This document shows, in pieces, positions 3,387 to 64,000 of a stretch of DNA of 64,000 bases. The notes beneath the pieces were generated by a model. That model was not told where the DNA came from, did no database searches, and worked only from the letters and a program-made list of their open reading frames with translations. The position numbers and the translations under genes were made by a program. The stretch covers positions 283,390,643 through 283,454,642 of the forward strand of contig NC_058134.1 of the NCBI RefSeq assembly GCF_016433145.1, in the 5' to 3' direction. This DNA comes from Gracilinanus agilis. Lineage: Eukaryota. Each line of letters begins with the position of its first letter. The first letter of the stretch is position 1.

Positions 3387-3571
3387 TTTTTTTTTAAACC
3401 CTTGTACTTCAGTGTATTGTCTCATAGGTGGAAGGTTGGTAAGGGTGGGCAATAGGGGTCAAGTGACTTGCCCAGGGTCACACAGCTGGGAAGTGGCTGA
3501 GGCCGGGTTTGAACCTAGGACCTCCTGTCTCTAGGCCTGACTCTCACTCCACTGAGCTACCCAGCTGTCCC
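3387..3571 (-). mobile_element. Young full-length marsupial SINE1 copy with target-site duplication
   Basis: Near-identical to the copies at 4506-4695 and 57253-57445. Flanked by direct repeat AGTAAATATTTTT starting at 3377 and 3572. Confidence 0.92.
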
Positions 3572-3654
3572 AGTAAATATTTTTTTTTTAAGAGCACTGT
3601 ATCCAGTTAGGCTCTGGTTTGAATTGACTCTGCCATTTATAGCTTTTTTTTTTT

Positions 3655-4505: not shown

Positions 4506-4695
4506 GGTTTTTTTTTTTTAAACCCTTGTACTTCGGTGTATTGTCTCATAGGTGGAAGATTGGTAAGGGTGGGCAATGGGGGTCAAGTGACTTGCCCAGG
4601 GTCACACAGCTGGGAAGTGGCTGAGGCCGGGTTTGAACCTAGGACCTCCTGTCTCTAGGCCTGACTCTCACTCCACTGAGCTACCCAGCTGCCCC
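4506..4695 (-). mobile_element. Young SINE1 inserted into the tail of the older SINE
   Basis: Full length. Target-site duplication CAGAAAGTAAGAG at 4493-4505 and 4695-4707. Confidence 0.92.
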
Positions 4696-7319
4696 AGAAA
4701 GTAAGAGTTTAAAAAAAAATGAAAAGAAAATGATTAGCTGGGTAACACTAGACAAATTGTGTAACCTAAGATGGTCCCACTTGTTTAACAGAAACCCTGT
4801 GGTTGTTAGGAGACTCAAGTGGGATAATGGAGATACTTTGTACAAGTCTACAAATGTCAGTTATTCAGCCCACCAGGTGGTATGGTTCACTAAAAGGAGG
4901 AAGGAGAAAGGAAATGAGCCGATTATGTAGGGAAAGTGAGGAATAACAGATGGCCAGGAAAAGCGTTGCCCAGTTACCCATAAAATGGAGTCATTAGGAT
5001 CCTTTATGGACAATCTATGGGACAACAAGGGCACCGGATGAAAACATGTGGATGGAGGGAATGCCCCATCTACTGAGCCATGAACCATTAAAGTCCTCAT
5101 TTCTGTGGCCTGAGGGCCAGTTTAGTTAAATTGGCTGAAGACTGATATGTTTGTTTTGGTTTTAGCAGGAACCTTTGAAAACCACCTATGGATGCAGAGC
5201 TGGTTTGGAAGATCTCAGTGGAGAGAGTCCCCACCCCACGGAAATCCCAACTCTTTGGAGCCCAAGTTTCATGATCAGGTGGTAATGCCAGGGAGCATCA
5301 TGACCAGCCCTTCTCCTCCTTTTCCTCCTCTTCACTCTGGGCGGGAGCAGAGTTGGGTGGCGGAGAGGACGCACCACCCTCGCAGAGGACTGATCTGGCT
5401 CTTCGAGGTGTGGATTTTCTCCACCATCTACTCAGAGCCCCCGGCAGTGTTTCATCAGAGCTGCTCAGAACCAGTCCCCGCCCAATAGCCTAACCTCAAT
5501 TCTCTAATCTGGGGTTCCCACTTCCCTTTTTTTCTGACTCCCCGGGGCTTCGCTCAGGCTGCAAAATCTGCTCAGGACCCAGCCTGGTTCCATCTTCCTA
5601 CCTCTTGTCCTCCATCCCTCCACGCCCCGAGGAGTGAGGTGGGAGTAGGAAGGAAGGAAGGGCAAGGCGGAGGGCCAGGGGGAGGCTGCGTGTGGCTGGT
5701 GGCTCCATTCCAAAAGGAAACAGCTTTGTTGCAGGGAGAGGAGAAGCTCTCAAGGTAAGGGATAAGCGGGGAGGCCAGGGATATACCATTCCTGGAAGAA
5801 CCCTCAACAAAGGGGCAATCGATCCCTGCGCCCGCGCTCCCTCTCTCTCAGAGCAGACGGGCTGTCTCTGCAGGGGAAGTTGTCTTCTGCTGCCGGGCAC
5901 AGCCGAGCCTCGGAACAATTAGGGAACAGGAGAGAGAGCCCGGATCCCCCCAGTCCCCTCCCCCAGCTGGAGCCAAGAAGTACCCAAGCCCAGAAGCTGC
6001 AATGCAGTCGTCTGGTACATAAACACCTCATCTTCCTGCCTCTCCTTGGCATCCCTACTGCCCAGGTGCCATCTGGTGGTAGTTGGAGGTAATGGCTAGT
6101 TTGGGGCGGTGGCGAAGAAGGGAGGGAGGGAGGCTCTTTGCTGGCTGCATCATTCCTAAAGAGTGGGCCACTGGAGCTCGGGAGACTTCCAAGGATCCCA
6201 GCTTTTCCCAGTGAGTCATTCTGTGAACCTTTGCTTTGTAATTACAGGTTCTACCATCATTTGCAAATTGATCTAAGTATGCCTGATGCTCACAACGGGG
6301 ATGAACTTGGACTTCAGTTGCCTGATCTATAAAAGGAAGGGGGGGGACCCCGGAGGGTCTCCAAAGCCCTGTCCAGCTTTAGGGTTATAGCCTTAAACAG
6401 CCCATGCTGGCAAACACATGGTACCCAGGCCATAGTTTACAGAGGCTTCTGGGACCTCCACTAAAATCATTTCCCAATGCCTCATTTTAGTTCAGAGGTT
6501 ATCCTGGGCTCTGGAGGCTCTGGCACCAAACCGGAGAACCTCTGAGTGTGGGTCTGGAGTTTGGATTCCCCCAACACATTCAGACACTCCTTAAAGCATT
6601 AGACAGAAGCTGATTGATTTTTCAGCCACAAGCAGTTCTCCAAGACCATTCACTAAGGCTGGAAGCTGCAGTCTGGTGCAAAGATACCGTGCCCAGGTTG
6701 ACAAGATGACAAATCCACAGAGTATTCTAAGGAGATGGTCTGCTGGTGGTGGATGGTGGTAGGAAATGGAGCAGGAACTGGGTGCCCACAGAGCCAAGGG
6801 ATCTCTGCTTTAACTCAAGTTGCTTTGATTGTCAGACAACAAATGTTCATTAAGTGCCTACTTAAATGAAACAAAATTGCAGGTCTTTGCCCTCAAGGAG
6901 TTTAGATTTGTTAAAGTCCCTCTTTAAATGGAGCACTCAGACTCCAACTGGATGCTAAATACAGATGTCATGTGACCAAGACAGAGGACAATTGGACTGT
7001 CACCTCCCACTAATAGGACTCTCCCTATCATCTCCCCATGCTGGTCTTGTCCAAGCTAACCATCCCCAGGTCTAGCAATCATTCCTAATGACATGATTTC
7101 AGACCCCTTCTATAAGCTACTGTAACATAATGGAAAGAGTTCTAGGTTTGAAGTCAGAAGACCTGAGTTCAAATACTTCCTGTGTGACCTGGGGGCAAGG
7201 TAGAACTTCTCACTTGTTCTAGAAGATGATTTCAAAGATTCCTTTTATTTCTAAGCCTTTAGGCTTACTTCTTACTTACTTCTAAGGGTTATCTTATAAC
7301 CCTTTACTTCTCCAAATGC

Positions 7320-7741: not shown

Positions 7742-7928
7742 AGCTGGGTAGCTCAGTGGATTGAGAGCCAGGCCTAGAGATGGGAGGTCCTAGGTTCAAA
7801 TCTGGACTCAGACACTTCCCAGCTGTGTGACCCTGGGCAAGTCACTTGACCCCCATTTCCTACCCTTACCACTCTTCCACCAAGGAGCTAATACACAGAA
7901 GTTAAGGGTTTAAAAATAATAAAAAAAA
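7742..7928 (+). mobile_element. SINE1 copy
   Basis: AGCTGGGTAGCTCAGTGGATTGAGAGCCAGGCCTAGAG head through AAGGGTTT plus A tail. Confidence 0.9.
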
Positions 7929-10093
7929 ATTTTACATCAGCTCAACTTGCTTCTATGCTGAGTCTTGACCTCATTTGATGACACCTTAATGAACCACTAA
8001 CTCCCCCAAGTCACATAGCTAAAATGGTCACACAGTCCTCTTCCATCTCTCACTGGCCTTTTTAATCTTCAGCCTGGATGAATTCTTGATGTGATTTTTC
8101 TACTATTGCTCCTAGGCTGTTGCATGTTACTGGAGAAAATTTTGTGTAACTTGTGCTAATCCAGATATGATCTGGGCCCAGAGTGAAGATCATTCATCTC
8201 AGAAGAGAGCCTGAGGAGCTCTCCTTTCCCCTTCCCAGAGAAATCAGGGATCTTGCACTTGAAAAAGACAAGAAGATAGAGCAGATAAGACCTGGGCTTT
8301 GGGGACCCGAACTGATTAACTGTTTCTGTTGCCTTTTGGGATTCTGGATTTCCTGCTTCTTGTGCAAAGAACCAGGTAGACTAGACCTGTATGTACCATG
8401 TGAGGAAGTTGCTGAGTGATGCCTACTTGCTAACGATTAGAACCAGGAGAAGAAATGATGATTAATCTTCCCTTGAATCTTCAGCCTCAGAAAACTGGAT
8501 TGGCAAGAGAAGGCACTACAGAACTGGGACCGGAGTGGGTAAGACTGGAAGATCTCCAGGATGGACACACGTGTGCCTTCCCATGATCAGTAAGTATGAG
8601 TGCTTTGAGAGTTTTCCCTCACCTCCCTAAAGAACTGAGAGGGCCAATTGGGAGGAAGCTTTGGGAGATGAGTGTGAAAGCGTTTTACTTTCGTTTTAGC
8701 CTACGTTGTTTAGCCACAGTAGCTTGAGTGTTTCCATCCTGTGTGTATTGGAGTGGGGGTGTTGATTGAGAGAAAATTCCAGATGTGAGATGGCAGATGT
8801 AGTCACAGATTTCAAATGTTGTCGTTTTGACTAGAATCTAAATGTCACCAGTGTTGGGTCTTGGGCTACTTGGTCTTGCTTAAAGGACTGCTTGGAGGAG
8901 CAGCCTAGACAGAGCATCATCTGGTGGCCAGTGAGGATAATACAGTCTCTGGGAAGATCATCAGCGTGCAGGAGAGGAACCGAAGGGGGTGCTGGGCTAG
9001 CTAGGGGCTCAAGGAGAGTGTCATTCCATGGGCAACTAGGTTTGAGTTCTACTGGATAATTAACATAGGGACCCATTGCCTTTCTGGGACATAAACTGAT
9101 TTGGATTGGCCCTGCTGGTCCCTGTAATAGACATATAAAGTATCACATGAACTCTCTCTATACAAAATGCTACATGTGAAATACATTGATTTCATTTCAT
9201 AGAAATTTATAGTGCAAAAGCCCCCATGGGCCATCACTATTGCTTGACAATAGTTTTATTCTATTCTTCTTGTCCTTCCATCTCAACTCCAAGACGGGTT
9301 GCTCCAAACTTTTCCCTTCCAATCACACACCCACATTTATAAGAGATGGACATAGTCTATTCCACTCTGAGAAGATTGAGGCTGTCAAAATTCCTTTGAC
9401 TTTCCTCTTTGAGTCTAAAAATTCCTCATTATTTTCATTCATTCTTTTTTTCCTGTATCAAAAGAAGAATTCTTGTTAAGAGCAATCACTCCAACCTTCA
9501 AAATGTCTCTTTCTCCCTTCGCTGTGACTTAGTTCTGGAATTCATTTCTTCCTTCTTGTAACAATAGCTCATATTTATACGGTACTTTATTATTATCCCA
9601 GTTTTGCAGATGAGGACATTGTGGTTCAGGGAGGTTGTGACTTGCCCAAGATCACACTATCAAACCAAGGTCTCTCCTAAGAGACAGTTTGATGGTGAAG
9701 GAGAGTGCCAGTCCTGAAGTCAGGAAGATGCATTTTTCTGAGGTCAAATCTGGCCTCAGACACCTACTGCCTATGTGGTTACTTAACCCTGTTTGCCTTT
9801 TAAAAAAATATTTCTCCTAACTCCAAGTCTAGTCTTTTAGCCTGCCTGCTGCCTTTTCATGAATTTTTAATCTCTCCTCTCTTTTGTGTACAAATGTCCT
9901 AAAATCTTCCCTCAAACCTCCTATTTCACCCATCTGCTATGATCTCTCCTTTCCATCCTGGTCAATTTGCTTTCCAGGGAGTTAATACTTGATCCTTCCA
10001 TTATCACTACCTCTTGTGATTTGGCTTCCATTTGCACCACTTCCCTGAAATGGCAATAATCAATGGCCAGAATCAATGGCCAGGAATGATGAC

Positions 10094-10345
10094 CTGAGGC
10101 TGGTGGATTGCTTGAGTTTAGGAATTCTGAGGTATAGGAGGGGAAAGGTCTTCTGGTGTCCACACTAACTCTTCTACCTATGTGGCAAGATTCCCTGGAG
10201 GTAAGGAGTGAGCCACTAGGTTGCCTAAGGAGAGGAGAATCAGTCTAAAGTGTTTACACTGAAAAAATAAACCAGAAAAAGTGTTTACACTGATCAGCAG
10301 TGGTCCAGCCGAATGGCCACTGGTAAGATAGGAAGACTTGGTCTC
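10094..10345 (+). pseudogene. Degenerate 7SL (SRP RNA) retropseudogene
   Basis: Collinear blocks match 7SL RNA: CTGAGGCTGGTGGATTGCTTGAGT, GGTGTCCACACTAA, CCACTAGGTTGCCTAAGGAG, CTGATCAGCAGTGG, GAATGGCCACTG, GGTCTC. The 5' end is missing and there are many substitutions. Confidence 0.8.
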
Positions 10346-11284
10346 AAGAAAAGTCAAGTGAAATCCAATGGTCTTTCTTCCATCTTCCTTTACATTGATG
10401 ATCCTCTCTACCTTCTGGATATCCTTTCCTTTTAGCTTCTTCATTCCACTACCTCTTTAGCCAGTCTGGGCTCTTTTTCCTTGTCCTGTCCTCTTAAGAA
10501 GAGTATTTCCCAAATTTTGATCATTGGTTCTGTTCTTTCTCTACATCTCATTTGGCAATCTAATTTCCCCAAAGCATTAGCCATCAAGGAATGAATGTGT
10601 AAAAATGCATTTTTGAAGCTATTGTTTTATGCATCATAATGCATATACAACTACTCCCCAATCTCTATCTCTGGTTTCTCTTTACAAACTTGCATCTCCA
10701 GCTGGCTAATGGTACCTTTCTACTTGCATGTTCTAGCCAAACCATTTTCCTTGCCACTTTCCTTATATGGGCTGTACTTTCCTAACAGTGTCTATGGAAG
10801 GTGTTCTCAGAACCTGGAATGCTGCTCTCCCCACCTCAATTAAAAACCTATCAGGAGCGGGGGACAAAGAAAAGATCTTGGATTCAAATCTGGTCTCAGA
10901 CATTTCCTAGCTGTGTGACCCTGAGTAATCACTTAACCTCCATTGCCTAGCCCTTACTACTCTTCTGCCTTGGAGCCAATACTTAATTTTGATTCTAAGA
11001 CAGAGGAAAAACAACAACAACAAAAAATCCTATCTGTTCTTTAGAGCTCAACTCAAATGCCTTCTTCTTCCTAATCACCTAATTGGTAATGATCTTCCCT
11101 CACTTCTCTCTCCTATATATTTATCTATCATTATAATTAGTGTGTCACATCCAAACTGTAACCCGAATGAGAGGGGAGCCCATGTTTTGTCCAAATCTTA
11201 TACTTCCTCAGGGGCCTAGCTACACACAGTAGAAATGCTCAGAAAATGTTTAATTTAATTGTCAAATTCCTATTCATCTTTTGG

Positions 11285-11570
11285 CTCAATCAATCAATAA
11301 GCATTTATTAAGCACCAACTCTGTGCCAAGCATTGTACTAAGTGTGGGGCATACAAAGACAAAAATAGGATTATCCCTATACTCAAGGAGAACTACAGTC
11401 AAAATATATACATAGAAGTATCTAAGAAGAAGCATTAGCAGCTGAGGAAACAGGAAAGATCTCAAGTAGGAAATGGCATTTGATTAGAGTTTTGGAGGAA
11501 AACTAGACATTCTAAGGATCAGAGAGAAGGGAATGAATTCTAGTCACCGGGAGATAGCAGAGGCAAAGAG
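11285..11570 (-). mobile_element. L2 3' fragment
   Basis: CAATCAATCAATAAGCATTTATTAAGCACC...TGTGCCAAGCATTGTACTAAG is the reverse complement of the L2 3' terminus. Confidence 0.7.
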
Positions 11571-15223: not shown

Positions 15224-16531
15224 TCAGTGTGGCATGGCAGTGATACGCATGCTCTGTGAGGCAATGGGGTAAGTCACCATGGGTGTAGTGGCGTGGCTCA
15301 TTGTGATTCCTGCTAGTGGCTGGGCCATCGAAACAGCCACAGGGGCAACGGATACGGCCACAGGGGCCATGGAGACTGGAGGTGGGGCCATGCCTTGAGC
15401 AATTGTCTGGGCCAGAGCAGCTGAGAGAGGTGTGATCTCTGGGTTCAGGTGGGGGGGTGGGGGAGGTGGGGGCGGTGCCGTGGGAGGTGCTGCATTAGTT
15501 GGTGGGGCAGCCGGGGCACCCGTGGGGGCTACGAGCTCTTGTTGGGACACGGGTCTAGGCTGCAGGGCCTGGCTGCTGAGTGTGGTATGTGTCTGAGCAA
15601 TGCCATGGTTGTAGTTGGTGACGGTGCCCACGCTGGGCGCCAACGTTTGTTCTGTGGCTGGTGCGGTGGAGCTCAGGGTCATGACCTTGGCCTGGTTACG
15701 GAACTGGGCGTTCTGCTCCAACAGGACCTCGTTGGTAGCCAATAAGTTGCTGACCTGCTTCTTTAGCTCTTCCACTCGCTTCCTGAGCATAGCATTCTCC
15801 TCCTCTAGCAAGCGGCACTCCAACCCCCGAGGTGGGGCCAGACTGTACTCAAATGTCTCAAAATGGGAACCATCGGAGGGGCACCCGCCCCCTCCCCGAC
15901 GGCGTTTGGGGCATGGCTCATGGTCCTCAAAGCCCCGGTCTGGAAGATCATATGTGTCATATAGATCATGGCGACGACTGGTGGGTGCTGGCCCTGCAGG
16001 ACCCCCTCCACCAGCACCCCCGCCACCTCTTGCTTCAAACTCAAAATCCCGCTGCAGGTGGCGGAACTTGCACTTGGCTCCTCGCTGGCAATCCCCTTTG
16101 AGGAAGTCCCGGCAGATGGGGACTTCCTCTTTTCCATTGGGGAGGTCAGCCGGAGAAAGGCCCAGGCCGGCCGCCACTTTCTGCCTTAGCCGAGGGGGGA
16201 GTTCACCTGTCTTCTTGTAGCCATCCTCATCCTCCTTGGAGCCATGGATGAAGCGGCAGTTCAGACGACTGCACTCCTTGTTCTGGAAGTCATGGCAGAA
16301 GATAAACTCATTCTTACTCACACCTAGGTTGGAGACCTCGCTAATGTCTGGGTGTCGGTAGCGGCAGCGCTTGCCCCGCTTACACACATTCCTCAGAAAG
16401 TCCCGGCAGATTGCATCCGAGCTGCCTGCGTTGGCTCCTGACCCAACTCCGCTGATCTCCTCACTACCACCACCTCCGGAGCCTCCGTTGCTGTTCCCTG
16501 TGCCATTGGTATAGCTGTCTCGGTCAGGCAT
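15224..16531 (-). CDS. ZC3H10: Zinc finger CCCH domain-containing protein 10 (435 aa, single coding exon)
   Basis: MPDRDSY... start; three CCCH fingers (CRDFLRNVCKRGKRCRYRH, CHDFQNKECSRLNCRFIH, CRDFLKGDCQRGAKCKFRH); coiled coil LLEEENAMLRKRVEELKKQV; Pro/Ala-rich tail ending RITAMPH. The exon acceptor CCCTAG| precedes position 16586. Confidence 0.98.
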   Translation of the reverse strand: MPDRDSYTNGTGNSNGGSGGGGSEEISGVGSGANAGSSDAICRDFLRNVCKRGKRCRYRHPDISEVSNLGVSKNEFIFCHDFQNKECSRLNCRFIHGSKEDEDGYKKTGELPPRLRQKVAAGLGLSPADLPNGKEEVPICRDFLKGDCQRGAKCKFRHLQRDFEFEARGGGGAGGGGPAGPAPTSRRHDLYDTYDLPDRGFEDHEPCPKRRRGGGGCPSDGSHFETFEYSLAPPRGLECRLLEEENAMLRKRVEELKKQVSNLLATNEVLLEQNAQFRNQAKVMTLSSTAPATEQTLAPSVGTVTNYNHGIAQTHTTLSSQALQPRPVSQQELVAPTGAPAAPPTNAAPPTAPPPPPPPPHLNPEITPLSAALAQTIAQGMAPPPVSMAPVAVSVAPVAVSMAQPLAGITMSHATTPMVTYPIASQSMRITAMPH

Positions 16532-18299
16532 TCTGGTCCCACTCCAAATGAGTGGCTTCTTCCTTTGCCGCCACCCTTGGGTACAACTAGGGAAAAGGAA
16601 AGCAGGTGTCAGGTAAAGGGAGCCCTGGAAGAGGACCCTGCCTCTCCCTGTTGCTGGCAGTGAAACTGTGCCTACAGTTCTTAGACTGGAAATGCTGCTG
16701 TTGCTGCTGCTGGGATATGAAGGGCATTGGGAGAGGTGCTGCCCAACCCCTTATGCAACTGATCTTGCTGGGATTCACTAATTCCTTGCTTATTCTGGGC
16801 AAGGGAAGAGGAATAAAGGCTGGGGGGGGAGGAGGGGGGAGAAGGCGCAGGGGAGGAATGGTGTAGGGCTAAGCCACCCACCTGCTCATTAATGAGAGTG
16901 AGCTGAAGAGAAGGGTAGTGTGGAATTTTGCCTCACCCTCTCACTGACCTTATTAAAGACATGGGAACGAAATCAAAACTTTTCTTAAGTGTCTGAATAA
17001 GCTTGGGCAGTAGGGTGGGGAGGGAGAAGTTGGTGACAAGATGCTGAGGGCATAGGAAAAAGGACAAAAAGGCAACAACCATAATTTTTGTTCCCTGATC
17101 TACAGTGCTTCTAGATTCCAAATCTCCAGACTGTCTGGAGCCCTGGAGAAAGGGAGAAGTGTCACCAGCTTGGGAAGCCCCCAAACTTTTCTGGGTGTCT
17201 ATTACACAGGGAGGAGAGGGATTCAACAGCTGTTCTCTCCCCACCCTCAGGACAAAAAGCAGTTTGGGAAACAAGGCCAAAATGGGAGGAGGAAGTTGCT
17301 GTGACTCCACAGAAACCTCCTTTCTGTCCCTCCTCCAGCACCAATAGTCCTTTTCACCTCCCACTCCTCAAACCCCACCCTTGCTCAGATGCATTTCATG
17401 AGAGATTTGACTTAACACTAAGCCAGGCTACTACTCACTCTCATAAAGTTCCTACTTATTTATAGACTCTATAAAATCCTCTTCTTTCCTCAAGGGACAT
17501 CTGAGATATTAGGTCCACAGCCTGCCTCCCCCTGGGGCCCAGATTTGCCGCTCACCATGCCTTACCCCCAAGTCTTGCTCAGGCCCCCCCCTCTGCTGCC
17601 CAAGGAGGCATGACTCCTTCCCTTGAATCAGGGGAAGCCCCTCCTGTTTTTCCTCCCCTTGTCCCTGACTCCATCTTTAGCCTTCCTTCAAGTTGGCTAA
17701 TCAGAACGTAACTGGCCCCAAGATGCAGCATGAGGCACTGGGTGACAATAACTATATTTAGGTAGGATGGAAAGAATGGGGAAAAGAGATGGCAAGTTCC
17801 CTGGTTAAAATGAGCCATCTCCATGCTAAGCCTAAGCCTCCCCTCCCTCAGAGCCCTCTTAAAAAGCACTCTCCCAGCCAGGCAGATACCAAAGAAGTTA
17901 GCTCAGGGAAAATGTGGGGCCGCTGCCCGCCTCCGGGGCCACATCACTGATGGGATCACAGCACGGGGCAGAGCCTTAGTAGGGGCCTGAGGTCTCCATA
18001 GGGCCTCAGAGTCCAGAAGGGCAGGAGGATCTGAGGGGGCCAGTACGCTGAGGAGTCTTGTCTTGGGCTGCCAGGTCCCTCGGGTTTCCAGGCTGTTCTG
18101 CTTCCTTACCTGTCAAAGGGAGGCGATGGGAGTTAGGAACGGGTACAGGAAAAGGCACGCTCGGAGGCAGAACTTTGGACCGCCAGGAGGAGGCGGGGGA
18201 AAACTGCGAGGATGTGGCAGGCTGGCCAAGGCTAGGGAAAGCTGTGAGCAGGAGCCCAACAGCGCGCCCGGGATAAGCCGAACCCCCCAGTCCGAAGCC

Positions 18300-18760
18300 C
18301 AGGGCTGCGTGACGTCACGGAGCAGGAGAGGGGTGTGCTAGGGACAGGCGAGTACCTGCGCTCAAGAGCTGCCAAAAGGGGCCTGGGATCCCTTGGGGGC
18401 CCCGCCGGCCGGCCGGCCCGCCCGCGGCCCGGCCAGTCCAGCCCCGGCTCCTCCCCTTCGGGCACCGCCTCCCCCTCCTTCACCTGCAGCCCTAGCCGCC
18501 GCTGTCCCTGCTGCAGCCGCCAGAACCGCCTGCCGGTTCCTCCGACTTCGACAAAGAGCCGCCCACCTAGAGGCACTTCCGCTTCCTACGGAAGAGGCGA
18601 CGCTCTAGGAAGCGGCCCCGGAACCAAACATGATCGACTCGGTACCTGCGCGTTCGGCCCCAGGAAGCTCCCAGCAGGCTCTGCGCGTCACGATGGTAAC
18701 AGAACGCTCCGCGCGGCCGACCAGGAAGTAAACGACTCTAGGATCGGGCCTTCAGGTAAT
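18300..18760 (-). promoter_or_regulatory. ZC3H10 CpG-island promoter and non-coding first exon region
   Basis: Very CpG-rich. ETS sites (GCGGAAGTG near 18580, ACTTCCTG near 18725); palindrome CGTGACGTCACG (CRE core) at 18308-18319; X-box-like GTTACCATCGTGAC near 18690. Candidate donors CAG|GTACC (18645), CAG|GTGAAG (18483) and CAG|GTACT (18355); which is used cannot be decided. Confidence 0.7.
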
Positions 18761-19049
18761 CTCGGGTCTGGCCTATCCCCAATCCTCCTAAAACGACCCG
18801 GAGAAGGCTTTTCCTTCCCTCACCCACAGCCTCTTTCCACCACATTGACCTTAAATCACCCAACCTTTGCTGTCACTGCAGAGCCGCTCATACTCGGCCT
18901 GCCCTACTCCCAAGCATTCCATTCATGCCAACCCCCAGTCATTTTCATTTCCTCGATAGCCCCTCACGGCAATTGCAGTGACAACAGGAAAGAAACGGCC
19001 TTGAAATAACACACAAGCTCATTGTTTTCGACCAAGAAAGTACTGAGGA

Positions 19050-25831: not shown

Positions 25832-26026
25832 ATATATATATATATTTAAACCCTTACCTTCCATCTTGGAGTCAATATTAGCTCCAAGGCAGAAGAGTGG
25901 TAAGGGTAGGCAATGGGGGTCAAGTGACTTGCCCAGGGTCACACAGCTGGGAAGTGTCAGAGGCCAGATTTCAACCTCCCGTCTCTAGGCCTGGCTTTCA
26001 ATCCACTGAGCTACCCAGCTGCCCCC
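25832..26026 (-). mobile_element. SINE1 copy with (TA)n tail and 12-bp target-site duplication
   Basis: GACAAAGCATTT at 25820-25831 and 26027-26038 flanks the element. Confidence 0.92.
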
Positions 26027-28229: not shown

Positions 28230-34800
<6,571 letters not shown>

Positions 34801-35426
34801 CCATGAGAAAAACTGCCCCAAAGGGGACGGTCTAGACCGGGGTGGGGTGGGGTACTTCCCAGTCATCTTAATATAAAGCACCTACCCTGTGCCACGCACT
34901 GTCCTAACCCCTGTGATTACAAGGAAAGGCAGAAAGCCCCAAACATGTATGGTACCTACAAGCTACACATAGCTAAACTGGAGATAACTGGGGAGGCACC
35001 GGCTTCCCACTGCATGGGCCAAAATGGTCCACTGTTAGGGAATTCTTATTAGAAAAGTTTCAGATTTTGGTGCCAAACAGGGCTGGATCTGGAGTCTGGG
35101 GACCCAGCTCTGTCACACCCTTACCACGTGTCCCCACATGTTCATGGACAAGTCACCTAAACTTAAGGATCTTAACTTTCTTTTCTGAGAGTCGAACTAA
35201 ATCCCGTCTAGTCTAAATCTGTGAACTAAAGGATTAGATTAACAAACGCATATTGACTGACAATAGGACCTAAAAGGCCCCAGATTCTGATTCTCCCATT
35301 TCAGGAATTTGAGAGTTCTTATTGTGATGGGGTACACAGAGGTTAAAGAAGAGGGATTTCTTCATCAAATCCCATATGTAAATTCCTACTAGTCACATAT
35401 AGGAAGATGATAAAACTTTTGACATT

Positions 35427-35432
35427 TTTATT
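35427..35432 (-). terminator. Candidate ERBB3 polyadenylation signal
   Basis: AATAAA about 990 nt after the stop and ahead of the PA2G4 CpG island. Confidence 0.6.
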
Positions 35433-36422
35433 CCAACACGTATAAAAACAAAACAAAACAAAAATACAGCTCCTTCAGTGACACACCTGAGATTCTCCAC
35501 CCCACTCCCATTCCCCCAAAAAGAGATGGGTATTGGGGAATTTGGACCCTCCTACCATACCAACTGGAGGTCCCTCACTATCACTGGACTGGGCATGGTC
35601 CAGGAAAATTGCTTTTAGGGACTCTGGTGAATCTGCTTTGGGATAGTAGGAAGCCCTTGGATTATATGAAGGTAGTTTTTTTACATGCACAGAAGTGTGG
35701 TTAAGTATAAATGTGAATGGTAGGAGATTTTTTTTTTTTTTTCCCCCTCTCATCCAGTCTTCTCTGCTGCTCCAGCTTTATGTATGTGTGAGTACTTTGG
35801 TCAGTGATGGTAAACTTTAAAAAAAGAAATTACTTCCAAGGGCCCTGTCTTTATGGTTTTCTTTACCTCCTTCCTCTTTCCATCCTTTGAGCTCTGTTGA
35901 CTAGGGGAGGTAGTAAGCAGCTGGTCCAGCTCCAGCCTTTGTGTGGGTAGGTAGGAAATAAATTGTCCCATTCCCTACCAAATAGCTAGACTTTATATAG
36001 AGGTTTTCTTAAGAGCCAGAAATACTAACTGGAATACTTGAACAGCAAAAATGACACAGGAATTAATTCTTCATATCTCCAGGGATTCCCCCTAAGGTAT
36101 CTGGGTAGCATAGAGGTGGGGATGGCACATAGCATAAAGGAAACCCTCCCAACTCTCACCAGATCTTTTGGAGGAGCTAGAGAAGAAAGTGCAGAATTGA
36201 TAACACTACATACATTTTGTTGGGGGTGAGGTGGGGTGGTATTTAAAAGCACCCCCCCCACACCAAGTAGGAGTGAATCAAGATAACCTCCAGGGATTGA
36301 GAGGAGAGCCTAAGGATAGAGGGAACACTGGGAGATAGCACTGAAAGGGTAGTAAAAGAGGGGTGCCCTCTAGAGGTGCCAGCTGCCATAAAAAGCCCCC
36401 ACAATGTCCCAAGGAGGAAGTG

Positions 36423-42759
<6,337 letters not shown>

Positions 42760-43024
42760 CTGGAGAGGGGAAGGATGACATAAGGAAGATGGTCTCAGAG
42801 AATTCTCAGGGAGCCGTGACCACTGTCCCTTTGCCCAGTGACCCCAAATTCCTGAGACTGGTTCCAAAGAGGAATGTGACACCCACCTGGGCTCATCCCC
42901 AATCCACTGTCCTCCCACCCCTCCTAACCTGTTGCCTACCCTTCTCCCTAGTTAGCTCAAGCCATAGGGGAAGACTTGGGAAATGGAAGTTTAAGGGCTT
43001 GGGCATATTAAGAAGGGTACGCAC

Positions 43025-49461
<6,437 letters not shown>

Positions 49462-50420
49462 GGCTGCTGCTTGCCGGGGGCCCGGGCCCAGGCCGGGGCT
49501 CCGGGGCTAAGACATCAGGACTGAGCAAGCCACCTGAGCTCGGAGGGGAGGAGGTGGTGGCGGCGGCGGCAGCAGGCTGGCCAGGTAGCCAACACCAAGT
49601 GTTCCAGGATCTCGAGCTGGAGCCAGGACCAGGGGGGAGGGAGGGGAGAAGGAAGGGGGTGCGTACGTGTGTGGGGAGTGGGGTGAGTCACGGCCGCTCC
49701 CGGACTCGCTAGCGCTGGCAGCTCCTCTGACTTTCGCAGGGTTGAAGTTCGATTTCGCCTGAGTCTCAGTCGTCCCGCACCGCCCACCCCCCTTACGCGG
49801 GCCTCGAGCTCATTGGCCAGACTGTGGGAACCCCCTTGCTCCGGCCAATCAGAGCAACAGTAGGGCTCACCCTCGTTTTCTCGTAGGAGAGGGGGGCAGA
49901 AAATTCCAAAGACTGCCCCCACACCCACTCCAGTAGTTGAAGGAAGGGCTCTCTACCGGCTGGCTCCTCCCACTATGTAAATGTACCCTCCCCCACCCTC
50001 TTACTTCCCTGGCCGGTTGGTCCACTTTGGTGTTTTTTTATCCCTCTTTGGCTGGGGGCAGGGGGAGCCCCTGCCTCCCCCTCCACCCCCGCCTCCCTGG
50101 GGAATTGAGACCCCACTACCGAGCCTTCCCGCCGGCAAGAGCCAGAGCCTCTCCAAGGCCCCGTGAAATCGCACGGTCTCGGGATGCTTCCCCCTCTCCA
50201 AACCCGGCGCCTGCCCAGCCTCCTGGGGGAATTCGAGGAGGGGAGGGGGCTTTAGTCTGGGAACAGACCCCCAGGCCCCGCCTTTCCATTCCCACTCGGA
50301 GGAAGGGAGAGGCAGACCCAGTCGAGCTAGGGTGGGGCTAAGTCTCAGTGCACCTGTTGCAGCCCGCACCTCCCCTACCCCGCCTTTGCTACCCCCCACG
50401 GCCGATCGAAGGGACAGCTG
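49462..50420 (-). promoter_or_regulatory. ERBB3 5' UTR and CpG-island promoter
   Basis: CpG/GC-rich region directly upstream of the ATG; CCAAT boxes near 49812 and 49845; GC boxes. Confidence 0.75.
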
Positions 50421-58989: not shown

Positions 58990-59200
58990 ATATATTTTTT
59001 TTAATTAAACCCTTACCTTCTGTCTTGGAGACAATACTGTGTATTGGCTCCAAGGCAGAAGAGTGGTAAGAGCTAGGCATTGGGGGTCAAGTGACTTGCC
59101 CAGGGTCACACAGCTGGGAAGTGTCTGAGGCCAGTTTTGAACCTAGGACCTCCCATCTCTAGGCCTGGCTCTCAATCCACTGAGCTACCCAGCTGCCCCC
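58990..59200 (-). mobile_element. SINE1 copy
   Basis: Full length, ends ...GAGCTACCCAGCTGCCCCC. Confidence 0.9.
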
Positions 59201-59639: not shown

Positions 59640-59838
59640 TTTTTTTTTTTAAATTTTAAACCCTTAACTTCTGTGTATTGACTCATAGGTGGAAGAGTGG
59701 TAAGGGTGGGCAATGGGGGGGTGGTCAAGTGACTTGCCCAGGGTCACACAGCTGGGAAATGTCTGAGGCCAGATTTGAACCCAGGACCTCCCGTCTCTAG
59801 GCCTGGCTCTCAATCCACTGAGCTACCCAGCTGCCCCC
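59640..59838 (-). mobile_element. SINE1 copy
   Basis: Full length. Target-site duplication GACTA(A/C)AATACTTTT at 59625 and 59839. Confidence 0.9.
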
Positions 59839-60194
59839 GACTACAATACTTTTGATTGTGGCTCAAATCAGATTAACATATGATTGGGAAATATTTACTG
59901 AACAAATTTAAAAAATAAAACATAGGTGCTATTCCTTAAAAATACTAAGTCAATATGCATCCTTCAGGGATCTTGATATATGACTTAGTGGTTCCCATTT
60001 TTATTTGAGTTCCCATTTTTATTAGAAGATTCTTAGGACCTTGCCATCAAGGGGTGGTATGTGATACGATTAGTGTTGCCCTGACACAACTTCTTTCCTT
60101 TCATCTACATCATAGAGAGATTTTTCCTAAGAGAAGACAAATCCGCTCCCAGAACCTAAATGCCTTCATCTCCTCTGATGCAGCTCTCTGGTCA

Positions 60195-60435
60195 TCTTGT
60201 TATTCAGTTGTTCAGTCAAATGACCCCATTTGAGGTTTTCTTGGCAAAGACCCTTGGAGTAGTTTGCTGATTCCTTCTCCAGTTCATTTTAAAGATGAGA
60301 AAACTGAGGCAAACAGTTAAGTAGCTTGCCCAGGATCACATAGCTAGTAATTATCTAAGGTCAGATTTGAACTTAGGAAGAGGAGTCTTCTTGACTCGAG
60401 GTGGGGCACTCTATCCACTGTGACATCTAGCTGCA
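60195..60435 (-). mobile_element. MAR1-type SINE
   Basis: GTTGTTCAGTC tail, GGTTTTCTTGGCAAAG, CORE segment, CATCTAGCTGC head. Confidence 0.8.
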
Positions 60436-62433
60436 TCCTCCTTGATCAACCAGAGGGATAAAAAAGTTGTAGCCACATGGAATCAGGGCCTCTCAGACTT
60501 AAAAGGTGCCTAAGATCCCTCAAGATGCCAAAATCTTGATGATCTACTGACCTGGTGAGTTTCCAGAAGGAGCCAAGAGAGGATGTATCTAGAGAAGTAC
60601 AATTCTATCCCTATTTCATGTTTGCTCTTTTAAGGGCAAAGTAAATTTGCTTATATATATATATATAAAATAACTTACAAGTTGATAAATGCTTTATTTC
60701 ATCCCACCATTGAACCTAAAATCAGATATAGGTTGGCGTAGAGTTATGTCTTCAACAGAAGGAAAAAATTGGAAGGAGAATCAGGCACCTAGAAGAGAAC
60801 CTTGCCCAAGAGGCTGATCTCTGAATAAATCCAATAGAGATAATAACAAATTGTGAGCAAAGTATGAGTGAGGTTTGGAGAAGGAAACCAAGTACTCAGA
60901 GGATTGTCATAAGCACACACAAATGTGTAGCTCCACAACTCTTTAGTCTTATGGGCAAGAATAAGGTGGGTGCATGGTATGGCTGTGTATCACAATTGAG
61001 AGTCCAGAGGTCTGGTCTCTGCCCTTTTATTTGATTGTTGTTTTGCACAGATTCACAGTGATCAAGTGAACTTTTGGATGAGTTGAATACCCCTTATTTA
61101 CCATTAGGTGAATTGGCGACCCTGGAATACCTGGATTAGATGGAGTTACAAACCATTTTTAATCAGGAGAGCTTTGCATTCTTTGCCTGAATGGGGCTGA
61201 CTAAAGCAGTAGTAGGTATAGAGAACCTTCCCGGTACAAAGCTGGACAAAGCTTCTGTCAGCTAGGGCCTCCCAAGGGACTGATCTTCACAATTCATCCT
61301 CCTCGCTTTCCTATTCAGATTTTAGGGAATTCCTTGGATCATGTCTTTTACAGTCACATTATTGTCATAGATACTAAAAGTTGATCATTTGGGTAACTAG
61401 GGTTGGCTTAGCACTCTCAGCCGGATGCCTTAGCAATAGCCTTGCTGTATTTCTGTAGACTGTTGACTTTGTGATGGTAGAGCTGAAAGCAGGAGCAGAA
61501 GAATTGATGGTAACAAATTGGTAGATGTTATGGTGACAGGGGAGCCAGGAGACTGTGGCCATCATGACTGAGGCTATATTATTAGCAAGATCTATCACCA
61601 CAGGGTCTCAGAGTCACCTAGGAGTATAGTGGATACATTAGAGTCTTACCCCATTTCCTTCCCACCTTTTCTTGGTCTTGAGTGTTCATCCCCCATTAAA
61701 TGATAATCCATCTTCCCTTTTGCAATTAAAGTCATATTTCTGTTTCTGCTATGATGTCTGTGGATGCCCTGTGGAGCCAAACCAAACCTTCCCACCTGAT
61801 TCTAATTGTGGGAGCTCCAGACCGGAGGAGGAGGAATCAACTAGAACCATCCTATGACTTTGCTAGGGACCTGGGTGGACCTGAGAAAAATAAAGGGGGA
61901 TTCAGAACTTAAAATTGTCTCCTTCCCTCTCTGAGAAGTAAAAACAGGAGCTGTTGGGGATGGGAGGAGGAAGGAGAATGGTGTTCTAGGAAGCTGGTGT
62001 CCACATCTTCCTAACCAGCTGAGAAAAGAACCATTCTGCCCTTGGGCTCAGTTTGGGGGCTGGGGGAACAGAGGATCAGTGGTGAGTCTAGCACAGGGGT
62101 CAGCAAACTATGGCACCTGCTGCCTATTTTTGTAAGGCTCAAGTTTGTGCCTTTAAAAATACATTTTTCTTATATTTAAAACTCTAAAACCCATGGCTAG
62201 CACAAGGGTCATATAGAAACATGAGTTGGGGAGGGTTGAGGCCAAGCTATGGACTCCTGGTTTGGTATATCAGTTGCTGTCAAAGGCAGTTGCAGTTCCT
62301 TGTCTCCATTCCCTGAAAAAGGTGTGTTTGGCAGTTGGGCCAGGGGAAAAGCCCTCTCTGGGGCTATGGTGAAGGTTGCCCATGGAAGTTGATCTACTCA
62401 TCCATTCCATGGGTCATTGGAAATGGCAACTAC

Positions 62434-63490
62434 GAGCTGGGCTTTTAATGGCTCCTTCCATGGTTCTATTATCCCAGCTGCCTGAGGGCAATACAAAGCA
62501 GGAAGATACTGTATGGGCCTTGATCTCAGGGCCATTGCTGGGTAAAGGAAAAGCAAAATAAGGTCTCATAATGAGTAGAATTGTAATCTGGTTAACCAAA
62601 CTTCTGAGAGCTGTGAATCTCGAGGGCTTGGGCAGGGGCCTTGGCAGGGGGATATGCCATTACAATGGCTATTCCATATCCAACCTGAGTGCCAGTCGCT
62701 GTAGGAGTATATTGTAGTGGCTGCAAAAGGTCAATGAAGAGTAACTGCCAAGATTGTGCTGGCCAAGTGCCCCAGGGATGCTCCCTTCCATGGGTACAAA
62801 AACACATTTCTTCTGTTGACATGTTGGGTACTGCTCTAGCACTAACTGGGCTTGTGTTTGGGTCAGGTGAATTCCTCTCTCAGGCAGCCAGGCAGCTAAG
62901 GGTCAGTGGCTTACCATGCATAGTTTCAGCATATTCTTAGGAGACCACTGAGGCATTGGAGCAGGTTGCATTGGCCTTCAGTCTTTTCAGTTGAGTCCAA
63001 CACGTCATGATCCCATTTGAGGTTTTCTTGGCAAAGATACTGGAATGGTTTGTCATTTCCTTCTCCAGCTCATTTTACAAATGACAAAACTCAGGTAAAC
63101 AGTGACTTGTTCAGGGTCACACAGTAATGTGACTAGTGTCAGAGGCCAGATTTGAACTCAGGCCTTCCTGACTCCAGGTCCAGCATTCTATCCTCTGTAC
63201 CTCCTGGCTGCCCTTTTCAGGATTAGTAGGCCTGTAATCTTTACACACTGCTTTTCTTTTTCCATTTGAGTGACCAAAACAATGTGAACTATGGAATGGA
63301 AGATTGTAATGCCATGGGAGCAGGGGAGCCTTAGACACTGGCCACCTTACCTAGTGGGGACAAATTGCAGGGCTGTTCAAAAACCCTTGAGACTGGTGTA
63401 TTGCCTTCCATGCCAAGTAAAAGCCAACTGGGGGTCCTGGTCCAGCAGTCTGAGAGGCATTGAAAAGAATGTATTTTCAATCAATCACAT
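62434..63490 (-). mobile_element. Degenerate ERV-L-like (class III) endogenous retrovirus pol: RT remnant 63490-63360, integrase remnant about 62920-62434
   Basis: RT: ENTFFSMPL..DQ..QLAFTWHGRQYT..KGF/LNSPAIC. Integrase: AWLPERGIHLTQTQAQLVLEQYPTCQQKK (zinc finger), GTWPAQSWQL, PQAAGIIEPWKEPLKAQL. These parallel ERV-L pol motifs; the region is frameshifted. Confidence 0.78.
62977..63213 (-). mobile_element. MAR1-type SINE inserted in the ERV pol remnant
   Basis: GGTTTTCTTGGCAAAGATACTGGAATGGTTTG, CORE segment, head ...CTGGCTGCCC. Confidence 0.85.
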
Positions 63491-63774
63491 CACAGAGAGA
63501 ATCCTTCATCCAGGCCCTTGGATTTTAACAGGGGAGGAGACCCTAGAGCTGACCTCTAGCCTCATATTGAAGGTCAAGTCTTTGAAGCGAGTCAAGTCCC
63601 AGGAAGGCATTCACTTTTGGCAACTTCTGGTAAAAATCCTCTGATGGACTGATCGCTTCCCTCCCGGGTTTGAAAGGATGAGAGATCTAATGACAGTCCT
63701 CTGCCAAGCCATGAACTCCTGTGTTATTAAGGAATGGTGCTGCTCCCCACCCTGCGCCCAACTGCCCAGAGGCC

Positions 63775-63810
63775 CCATCCATCCATCCATCCATCCATCC
63801 ATCCATCCAT
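63775..63810. repeat. (CCAT)9 microsatellite
   Basis: Direct reading. Confidence 0.95.
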
Positions 63811-64000
63811 CTGTTCTCCATCTTCTTTTCATAGACCTCTGCCTTATGCTATTTAACTCTTTGACTAGAATAACCCAGTTGCCTTCTTGTCGCTCCCACT
63901 TCAAAATGAGTTTCAGTCATTATGAGTTAAAGGGTGAGGACAAATCTTTCTTGCTGTTGAGGGGCACGGGAAGGAACATTTCCTTTCCTTCGAATTCATT

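What the first reader, a model, noticed from the sequence alone, without database searches (positions are those of the whole stretch)
42740..43025. ERBB3 exons 6-11 are absent: exon 5 lies 265 nt from exon 12
Seen: exon 5 (43090-43025, ...EDCQT, donor GTGCGT) is followed by a 265-nt intron (43024-42760) and then exon 12 (acceptor CTCTCCAG|, [10 protein letters not shown]...). The intervening exons (TKTICAPQC..., ACRHFNDSG..., HNFVVDQ..., ACEGTGSG..., DPWHKIPAL..., YLNIQSWP...) were not found here, in neighbouring introns or elsewhere in the window by eye. Known: vertebrate ERBB3 has 28 exons; exons 6-11 total about 661 nt in human (from memory) and encode most of domain II and much of domain III. 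Joining exon 5 (phase 1) to exon 12 (phase 2) reads L-G-A-S-H-C-stop (TGA 42742-42740), a 210-aa secreted fragment and likely NMD target. All 22 remaining exons are intact, with no decay, and synteny is canonical. That argues against an old pseudogene and for a very recent deletion, a misassembly or an artificial edit. A true homozygous loss would be remarkable because ERBB3 is essential in mouse development.
Basis: partly seen in the sequence, partly recalled or inferred. Interest (0 to 1): 0.9.

Follow-up and report, generated by a model that had tools for sequence, protein, structure and literature searches.

The report
ERBB3 exons 6–11 missing: likely misassembly

Summary
ERBB3 lies on the minus strand. 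Exon 5 (43090-43025) is followed by a 265-nt intron and then exon 12 (42759-42554). Residues 205-425 (661 nt, exons 6-11) have no match anywhere in the window.

The window comes from Gracilinanus agilis assembly GCA_016433145.1. This is a 100-bp-read stLFR/Supernova assembly whose gaps were closed with SOAPdenovo2 GapCloser.

Monodelphis and Tasmanian devil ERBB3 loci are collinear with the window except for one block of 2.09 kb and 2.27 kb respectively. The block runs from mid intron 5 to mid intron 11. It is 55 times larger than any other indel at the locus. About 13 nt at the junction cannot be assigned to either intron.

The 22 remaining exons have GT-AG introns, open frames and dN/dS 0.07 against Monodelphis, so there is no decay. 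An unplaced 8.2-kb contig duplicates exons 15-28 at 99.95%, which shows local assembly trouble.

My estimates: assembly dropout or false gap closure about 0.7; real recent deletion allele, probably heterozygous, about 0.2; fixed loss about 0.03. I could not reach the species' reads, so this is not settled.

Another first-stage note in this scan (s1-192322) covers this same stretch.

The parts
35413..49632 (-). ERBB3 gene as present in the window: exons 1-5 and 12-28, 22 exons in all
   Evidence: Exon map from Monodelphis ERBB3 mRNA (L002) against the window, with all 21 introns GT-AG. Frames are open: 204 codons plus 1 nt, then 918 codons to the stop.
43025..43090 (-). Exon 5 (66 nt, residues 184-204, ends in phase 1), donor GTGCGT
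   Evidence: 21/21 residues identical to Monodelphis.
42873..43024 (-). Retained 5' part of intron 5, homologous to Monodelphis L001 9413-9543
   Evidence: Local alignment and blastn. The last ~40 nt before 42879 are identical to Monodelphis.
42866..42878 (-). Junction: 13 nt (CACATTCCTCTTT) not clearly assignable to intron 5 or intron 11. The breakpoint lies within it.
   Evidence: Alignments A1 and A2 and k-mer mapping. No match in the missing Monodelphis block, and no second copy in the window.
42760..42865 (-). Retained 3' part of intron 11, homologous to Monodelphis L001 11634 onward, acceptor CTCTCCAG
42554..42759 (-). Exon 12 (206 nt, residues 426-493, starts in phase 2, ends in phase 1)
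42740..42742 (-). Premature TGA reached if exon 5 is spliced to exon 12
   Evidence: product of 210 aa ending LGASHC*.
33681..41928 (-). Stretch (ERBB3 exons 15-28 plus downstream) that also exists as unplaced contig JADWME010045769.1 of the same assembly
   Evidence: L003 aligns over all 8,248 bp at 99.95%, with 4 scattered mismatches and no gaps.

Best explanation
The missing block is an assembly dropout. The animal most likely has a normal 28-exon ERBB3. The roughly 2.1 kb from mid intron 5 to mid intron 11 failed to be threaded into this scaffold by the 100-bp-read Supernova assembly. The two flanks were then joined without Ns, most plausibly by the greedy gap-closing step (SOAPdenovo2 GapCloser). 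That join left about 13 nt of unassignable sequence at the junction. A possible contributing cause, inferred and not shown for this species, is a nearby tandem ERBB3-like paralogue. In other marsupials this paralogue carries a 98-100% identical copy of intron 4 through exon 16, which would tangle a short-read graph over this region. Shown: the block is absent, the junction is clean, the rest of the gene is under strong constraint, the assembly is short-read and gap-closed, and the locus has a redundant unplaced contig. Inferred: that the join is artificial.
For: (1) Source. The window is G. agilis GCA_016433145.1. The assembly used stLFR 2x100 bp reads, Supernova v2.1.1 and GapCloser v1.10. 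Contig N50 is 57 kb, 8.25% of bases are N, and 808 of 9,226 BUSCOs are missing and 290 fragmented. So missing gene pieces are common in this assembly. [quoted passage not shown] (2) The gene shows no decay. There are 1,122 open codons, no indels against Monodelphis, dN/dS 0.071, zero non-synonymous changes in exons 3-5, and all introns are GT-AG. (3) The gap is singular. It measures 2,090 bp, against a maximum of 38 bp among 174 other indels in 17.4 kb. The same block is missing relative to the devil. (4) The locus was not assembled cleanly. An unplaced contig duplicates exons 15-28 at 99.95%, starting about 940 bp from the junction. (5) All other marsupials retrieved have full-length ERBB3, including the didelphid Monodelphis. 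(6) The devil's tandem ERBB3-like gene shares a 4.4-kb, 98%-identical tract with ERBB3, with perfect runs of up to 775 bp inside the missing block. The window ends about 0.9 kb short of where that paralogue would lie. (7) From general knowledge: ERBB3 null is embryonic-lethal in mouse, and homozygous loss causes a lethal contractural syndrome in humans.
Against: The junction carries no N and no obvious assembly scar. No repeat or long microhomology is visible at the breakpoints in the Monodelphis proxy. The GC content of the missing block (50-60% in Monodelphis) is no higher than that of the retained flanks. A clean two-intron breakpoint with a few filler bases is also what a genuine end-joining deletion looks like. 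I found no contig, protein model or read assembly from this species that carries exons 6-11. The presence of the paralogue in didelphids is unproven.
Confidence: 0.7

Rival explanations
1. A real, very recent 2.1-kb deletion allele carried heterozygously by the sequenced wild male (LMUSP501). Supernova's pseudohaplotype output happened to keep the deleted haplotype. The allele would be a null: exon 5 to 12 splicing frameshifts to a 210-aa fragment that is probably removed by nonsense-mediated decay. The intact allele would mask it.
For: The junction is clean, has no Ns and holds about 13 nt of filler, as in end-joining deletions. No repeats flank the breakpoints in Monodelphis. The absence of decay fits a young allele. 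The assembly does retain haplotype-level differences at this locus (L003, 0.05% divergence). From general knowledge: heterozygous Erbb3 loss is tolerated in mice, and Supernova outputs one arm of a heterozygous bubble.
Against: The prior is low. A few exon-removing heterozygous deletions are expected per genome, whereas about 12% of conserved genes are missing or fragmented in this assembly. No alternative contig carrying the intact arm was found.
Confidence: 0.2
2. A real deletion that is fixed or homozygous in G. agilis. ERBB3 would then be either null or expressed as an exon-12-skipped, in-frame 1,054-aa receptor. That receptor would lack most of domain II, including the dimerisation arm, and all of domain III.
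For: The exon 5 to exon 13 join is in frame and gives 1,054 aa (also noted by s1-192322). Nothing in the window contradicts the assembled sequence.
Against: Exon 12 and all other exons are under strong purifying selection (dN/dS 0.07-0.09). That is not expected if exon 12 were skipped or the gene were dead for any length of time. The gene is essential in mouse and human (general knowledge). All other marsupials keep the block.
Confidence: 0.03
3. The block is displaced rather than lost, sitting elsewhere in the window or the assembly, or it was removed deliberately when the window was prepared.
For: 3D-DNA and Juicebox curation can move fragments.
Against: There is no trace on either strand of the 64-kb window at protein or DNA level. 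3D-DNA joins insert Ns, and there are none. The operators state that they mask with N rather than delete. Where it can be checked, the window matches the public assembly. No G. agilis partial protein with these exons is on record.
Confidence: 0.05

Closest known systems
False gap closure or sequence dropout in short-read assemblies (Supernova scaffolds finished with SOAPdenovo2 GapCloser)
   Same: A unique, conserved, kilobase-sized block is absent with no N. The flanks are correct up to the join. The assembly has low contig N50, many missing or fragmented BUSCOs, and a redundant unplaced contig at the same locus.
   Different: Not demonstrated here. No read-level evidence could be obtained, and no repeat that would explain a spurious overlap is visible in the proxy species.
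Erbb3 null alleles (mouse knockouts; human lethal congenital contractural syndrome 2), from general knowledge
   Same: The exon 5 to 12 transcript would be a frameshift null that leaves only domain I and the start of domain II.
   Different: Those alleles are lethal when homozygous. Here the zygosity is unknown, and so is whether the allele exists in the animal at all.
EGFRvIII (tumour-specific genomic deletion of EGFR exons 2-7), from general knowledge
   Same: An intron-to-intron genomic deletion removes a block of ectodomain exons from an ErbB-family receptor.
   Different: EGFRvIII is in frame (801 nt) and yields a constitutively active receptor. This block is 661 nt and out of frame unless exon 12 is also skipped. 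It removes the dimerisation arm and domain III, not domains I-II.
Natural secreted ERBB3 ectodomain forms: alternative-transcript sErbB3 isoforms in human (general knowledge) and the marsupial tandem erbB-3-like gene (P0169, P0283-P0285)
   Same: Both are truncated, kinase-less ERBB3 products. The marsupial paralogue is an ectodomain-only protein of 487-634 aa.
   Different: Those products retain domains I-IV or I-III and are likely ligand-binding. The 210-aa product here has only domain I plus a fragment of domain II.

Membership tests
ERBB3 orthologue | Sequence closer to ERBB3 than to EGFR, ERBB2 or ERBB4 | tested here: met
   Exon 12 scores E 1e-42 against ERBB3 structures, 1e-23 against ERBB4 and 1e-15 against EGFR. 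The retained exons are 97.9% identical to Monodelphis ERBB3 at the amino-acid level.
ERBB3 orthologue | Conserved synteny: PA2G4 immediately downstream and ZC3H10 beyond | tested here: met
   The window is collinear with the Monodelphis and devil ERBB3-PA2G4 loci. A 435-aa CCCH zinc-finger ORF lies at 15224-16531.
ERBB3 orthologue | Complete 28-exon structure encoding domains I-IV, transmembrane segment, kinase and tail | tested here: not met
   Exons 6-11 (residues 205-425: most of the Furin-like domain II and most of receptor-L domain III) are absent from the assembled sequence.
Unitary pseudogene or lineage-specific gene loss | Relaxed constraint and accumulated disabling mutations in the remaining exons | tested here: not met
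   dN/dS is 0.071, with no stops, no frameshifts and intact splice sites in 22 exons.
Unitary pseudogene or lineage-specific gene loss | The lesion is present in the organism's DNA (reads or PCR) and homozygous or fixed | not testable with these tools
   Exact look-ups of ORFs flanking the junction found no read assemblies of this species. The chromosome record's DNA was not retrievable.
Assembly artefact (false gap closure or dropout) | The assembly method is prone to it and there is local evidence of assembly trouble | tested here: met
   The assembly used short reads, Supernova and GapCloser. GapCloser is reported as greedy. A redundant unplaced contig sits at the locus.
Assembly artefact (false gap closure or dropout) | The missing sequence is present in raw reads and the junction lacks read support | not testable with these tools
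EGFRvIII-type in-frame ectodomain deletion | Deleted exons sum to a multiple of 3, so a shortened receptor is made | tested here: not met
   The block is 661 nt and the exon 5 to 12 join frameshifts to a stop after 6 codons. Only additional skipping of exon 12 restores the frame.

The most novel reading that the evidence does not exclude
The deletion is real and homozygous or fixed in Gracilinanus agilis. This opossum would then live without a canonical ERBB3. It would be either a natural null of a gene that is lethal to lose in mouse and human, or it would express an exon-12-skipped 1,054-aa receptor with no dimerisation arm and no domain III. Neuregulin signalling would have to be rerouted, for example through ERBB4 or an ERBB3-like paralogue.
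Probability: 0.03. Interest if true: 0.85.

Novelty: not a real feature. Interest (0 to 1): 0.2.

Why it matters
If taken at face value, this locus would be scored as loss of an essential receptor gene in a marsupial. It would then propagate into gene-loss screens, BUSCO-style completeness statistics and comparative studies that use this assembly.

Three points put the finding in context. The lesion is a single clean 2.1-kb dropout in an otherwise perfectly constrained gene. The assembly is short-read and gap-closed. And the decisive read sets are public. It should therefore be flagged as a probable assembly error and checked before any biological claim is made.

If reads showed instead that it is real, even as a heterozygous allele, it would be a rare natural ERBB3 null in a wild mammal.

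Tried and rejected
(1) Exons 6-11 elsewhere in the window. I ran tblastn with whale, pigeon, EGFR-family and 12 marsupial proteins at E up to 1000, plus blastn at word size 7. Only paralogous domain I/III and II/IV cross-matches and noise came back.

(2) A G. agilis partial protein or unplaced-contig model carrying exons 6-11. None appeared among 120-381-aa or 494-1571-aa candidates.

(3) A chromosome-level G. agilis ERBB3 protein model. No separate cluster was seen. It may be hidden among six unlisted members of the P0171 cluster, or it may not exist as a protein. This is unresolved.

(4) Read-level contigs of this species. Exact look-up of two ORFs lying wholly in the retained flanks found nothing on record.

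(5) Repeats or inverted repeats at the breakpoints in Monodelphis. None were found.

(6) GC-bias explanation. The block is 50-60% GC, like its flanks.

(7) Templated origin of the 13-nt junction filler. No match was found.

(8) Whether the missing block is the most perfectly homogenised part of the devil ERBB3/ERBB3-like tract. It contains the longest perfect run (775 bp), but exons 12-15 are equally similar, so the result is not specific.

(9) Dating the ERBB3-like duplication relative to didelphids with a tree on exons 2-3. The paralogues form one clade, but its placement is unresolved with 113 residues.

(10) Logan fragment P0327/L007. It is sauropsid and irrelevant.

(11) DNA for the wombat loci and for this assembly's chromosome. 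Not retrievable.

Full report
OBSERVATION. On the minus strand, exon 5 occupies 43090-43025. It ends ...EDCQT plus one base and has donor GTGCGT. A 265-nt intron (43024-42760) follows and ends CTCTCCAG. Exon 12 then runs from 42759 to 42554. Against solved structures, the exon 5 peptide matches ERBB3 residues 184-204. The exon 12 peptide matches ERBB3 residues 426-493 at E about 1e-42, far better than ERBB4 (1e-23) or EGFR and ERBB2 (1e-15 or weaker). The window contains no N.

IS THE BLOCK ANYWHERE IN THE WINDOW? I fetched full-length relatives, starting with a representative search using exon 12. I then used a region-restricted search with the grey-whale model P0001, whose Pfam hits cover the Furin-like and second receptor-L domains. 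tblastn of whale, pigeon, EGFR-family and twelve marsupial ERBB3 proteins against both strands leaves exactly residues 205-422 of every marsupial ERBB3 unmatched. A word-size-7 blastn of the corresponding Monodelphis DNA finds only noise, with best E 0.056. In the Monodelphis mRNA, exons 6-11 are positions 791-1451, which is 661 nt.

WHERE THE WINDOW COMES FROM. Exons 15-28 are essentially identical to P0282, a partial 'erbB-3-like' model from Gracilinanus agilis. The 8,248-bp unplaced contig that carries it (L003, JADWME010045769.1) aligns to window 41928-33681 at 99.95%, with four scattered single-base differences and no gaps. An exact look-up of the single-exon CCCH zinc-finger ORF at 15224-16531 returns assembly GCA_016433145.1, on a 313-Mb record. 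The assembly paper (PMC8390783) gives the method: stLFR 2x100-bp reads, Supernova v2.1.1, gap closing with SOAPdenovo2 GapCloser v1.10 on 50x short-insert reads, then 3D-DNA and Juicebox. Contig N50 is 56.9 kb and 8.25% of bases are N. BUSCO completeness is 88.1%, with 808 genes missing and 290 fragmented out of 9,226. RNA-seq from kidney, muscle and liver and the WGS reads are under PRJNA565840, and the stLFR reads are under CNP0001147.

ANATOMY OF THE LESION. The Monodelphis ERBB3 locus (L001) is collinear with the window at about 88% identity. L001 1493-9543 matches window 50994-42873, and L001 11634-21008 matches window 42865-33356. L001 9544-11633 (2,090 bp) has no counterpart. That block contains Monodelphis exons 6-11 (about 9597-11545). 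The left break is in intron 5, 131 nt after exon 5 and about 54 nt before exon 6. The right break is in intron 11, about 90 nt after exon 11.

The Tasmanian devil ERBB3 locus (L005) gives the same picture independently. It is collinear except for 16639-18908, a 2.27-kb stretch holding exons 6-11.

At base level, identity to Monodelphis intron 5 runs to window 42879, and homology to intron 11 resumes at 42865. The 13 nt between them (42878-42866) cannot be confidently assigned to either side. They match nothing in the missing block and nothing else in the window. Monodelphis has no direct or inverted repeats at the two breakpoints, and its block is 50-60% GC, like its flanks. Among 174 other indels in 17.4 kb of G. 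agilis-Monodelphis alignment, the largest is 38 bp and the median is 3 bp. The 2.09-kb gap is therefore a singular event.

STATE OF THE REST OF THE GENE. All 22 remaining exons are present and all 21 retained introns are GT-AG. Exons 1-5 give 204 codons plus one base. Exons 12-28 give 918 codons up to the normal stop. There are no stops and no codon indels relative to Monodelphis. Amino-acid identity is 97.9%, and dN/dS is 0.071 at dS 0.14. Exons 3-5, right next to the junction, have zero non-synonymous changes, and exons 12-15 give 0.09. This excludes an old pseudogene. If the lesion is real, it is very young relative to the split from Monodelphis.

CONSEQUENCES IF TRANSCRIBED AS ASSEMBLED. 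Splicing exon 5 to exon 12 frameshifts and gives ...QT-LGASHC-stop, a 210-aa product with TGA at 42742-42740. Splicing exon 5 to exon 13 is in frame and gives 1,054 aa lacking most of domain II and all of domain III. The latter agrees with the other first-stage note on this stretch.

REAL OR ARTEFACT? I could not reach this species' reads. Exact look-ups of two ORFs lying wholly in the retained flanks are not on record. No G. agilis protein carrying exons 6-11 was found, and no separate chromosome-level ERBB3 model either. The chromosome's DNA was not retrievable. The judgement is therefore probabilistic.

Several points favour an artefact.
- The assembly type and its roughly 12% missing or fragmented conserved genes.
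- The documented greediness of GapCloser (PMC9575681).
- The redundant unplaced contig that begins about 940 bp from the junction, which shows this locus was not assembled cleanly.
- The pristine state of the gene.
- Intact ERBB3 in every other marsupial retrieved, including a fellow didelphid.
- From general knowledge, the lethality of ERBB3 loss in mouse and human.

A candidate mechanism emerged from other marsupials. The devil, antechinus, dunnart and wombat have a separate 'erbB-3-like' gene encoding only an ectodomain. Its exons 5/6 through 13/15 are 100% identical in protein to the same species' ERBB3, while its exons 1-4 are 68-93% identical. In the devil it lies in tandem 15.8 kb upstream of ERBB3. 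It shares a 4.4-kb tract, from intron 4 to exon 16, that is 98% identical including introns. Perfect runs of 268, 305 and 775 bp fall inside the block missing here. Such a tract is a trap for a 100-bp-read graph.

Whether G. agilis has this paralogue is unknown. The window's upstream end is orthologous to the devil's intergenic region and stops about 0.9 kb short of where the paralogue would end. A tree of exons 2-3 does not resolve whether the duplication predates didelphids.

Other points favour a real deletion. The join is clean and N-free, it has a few filler bases, and no flanking repeats are visible. That is equally what an end-joining deletion looks like. From general knowledge, Supernova can also output the deleted arm of a heterozygous bubble.

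VERDICT. I put an assembly dropout or false gap closure at about 0.7, a real and probably heterozygous recent deletion allele at about 0.2, a fixed or homozygous loss at about 0.03, and displacement or editing at about 0.05. As a biological feature it is most likely not real. The decisive test is simple and uses public data: read support for the junction versus reads carrying exons 6-11.

Noticed in passing
L004:10001-26194 and L005:10001-25281 (Sarcophilus harrisii GCA_048593225.1, CM109178.1); proteins P0169, P0283, P0284, P0285: Australidelphian marsupials have a tandem 'erbB-3-like' gene about 16 kb upstream of ERBB3. It encodes an ectodomain-only protein (487-634 aa, no transmembrane segment or kinase). 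Its exons 1-4 are diverged (68-93% aa identity), but exons 5-15 are 100% identical in protein to the same species' ERBB3 in four species. In the devil, a 4.4-kb tract including introns is 98% identical, which suggests ongoing gene conversion. The paralogues form one clade (99/97). A three-term search of the paper library (ERBB3, marsupial, duplication) returned nothing relevant.
   Followed up: partly
window 33681-41928; L003: The assembly keeps an unplaced 8,248-bp contig that duplicates ERBB3 exons 15-28 and the ERBB3-PA2G4 spacer at 99.95%. The four SNP-like differences are at window 37276, 35727, 35277 and 34752. It is probably an unmerged haplotig, and NCBI annotated it as a separate partial 'erbB-3-like' gene (P0282).
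   Followed up: yes
window 59885-63921 versus L004:27094-33378: The 14 kb upstream of ERBB3 exon 1 is orthologous to the devil's spacer between the ERBB3-like gene and ERBB3. The window ends about 0.9 kb before the point where the paralogue's last exon lies in the devil, so the next window upstream should show whether G. agilis has the paralogue.
   Followed up: partly
P0001 (Eschrichtius robustus KAJ8786744.1), residues about 186-210: This grey-whale ERBB3 model reads exon 5 in the wrong frame and lacks exon 6. Its residues match the +1-frame translation of the opossum exon 5 (window 43099-42983). It is a mispredicted model, and it is the 50%-cluster representative in the protein library.
   Followed up: no
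window about 3448-3572, 4572-4696, 7742-7861, 25908-26025, 44641-44745, 59075-59199, 59723-59837, 63101-63213: A SINE-like element of about 120-130 nt is present in many copies in both orientations. It is shared with the devil loci at 72-80% identity, and one copy lies in ERBB3 intron 3.
   Followed up: no
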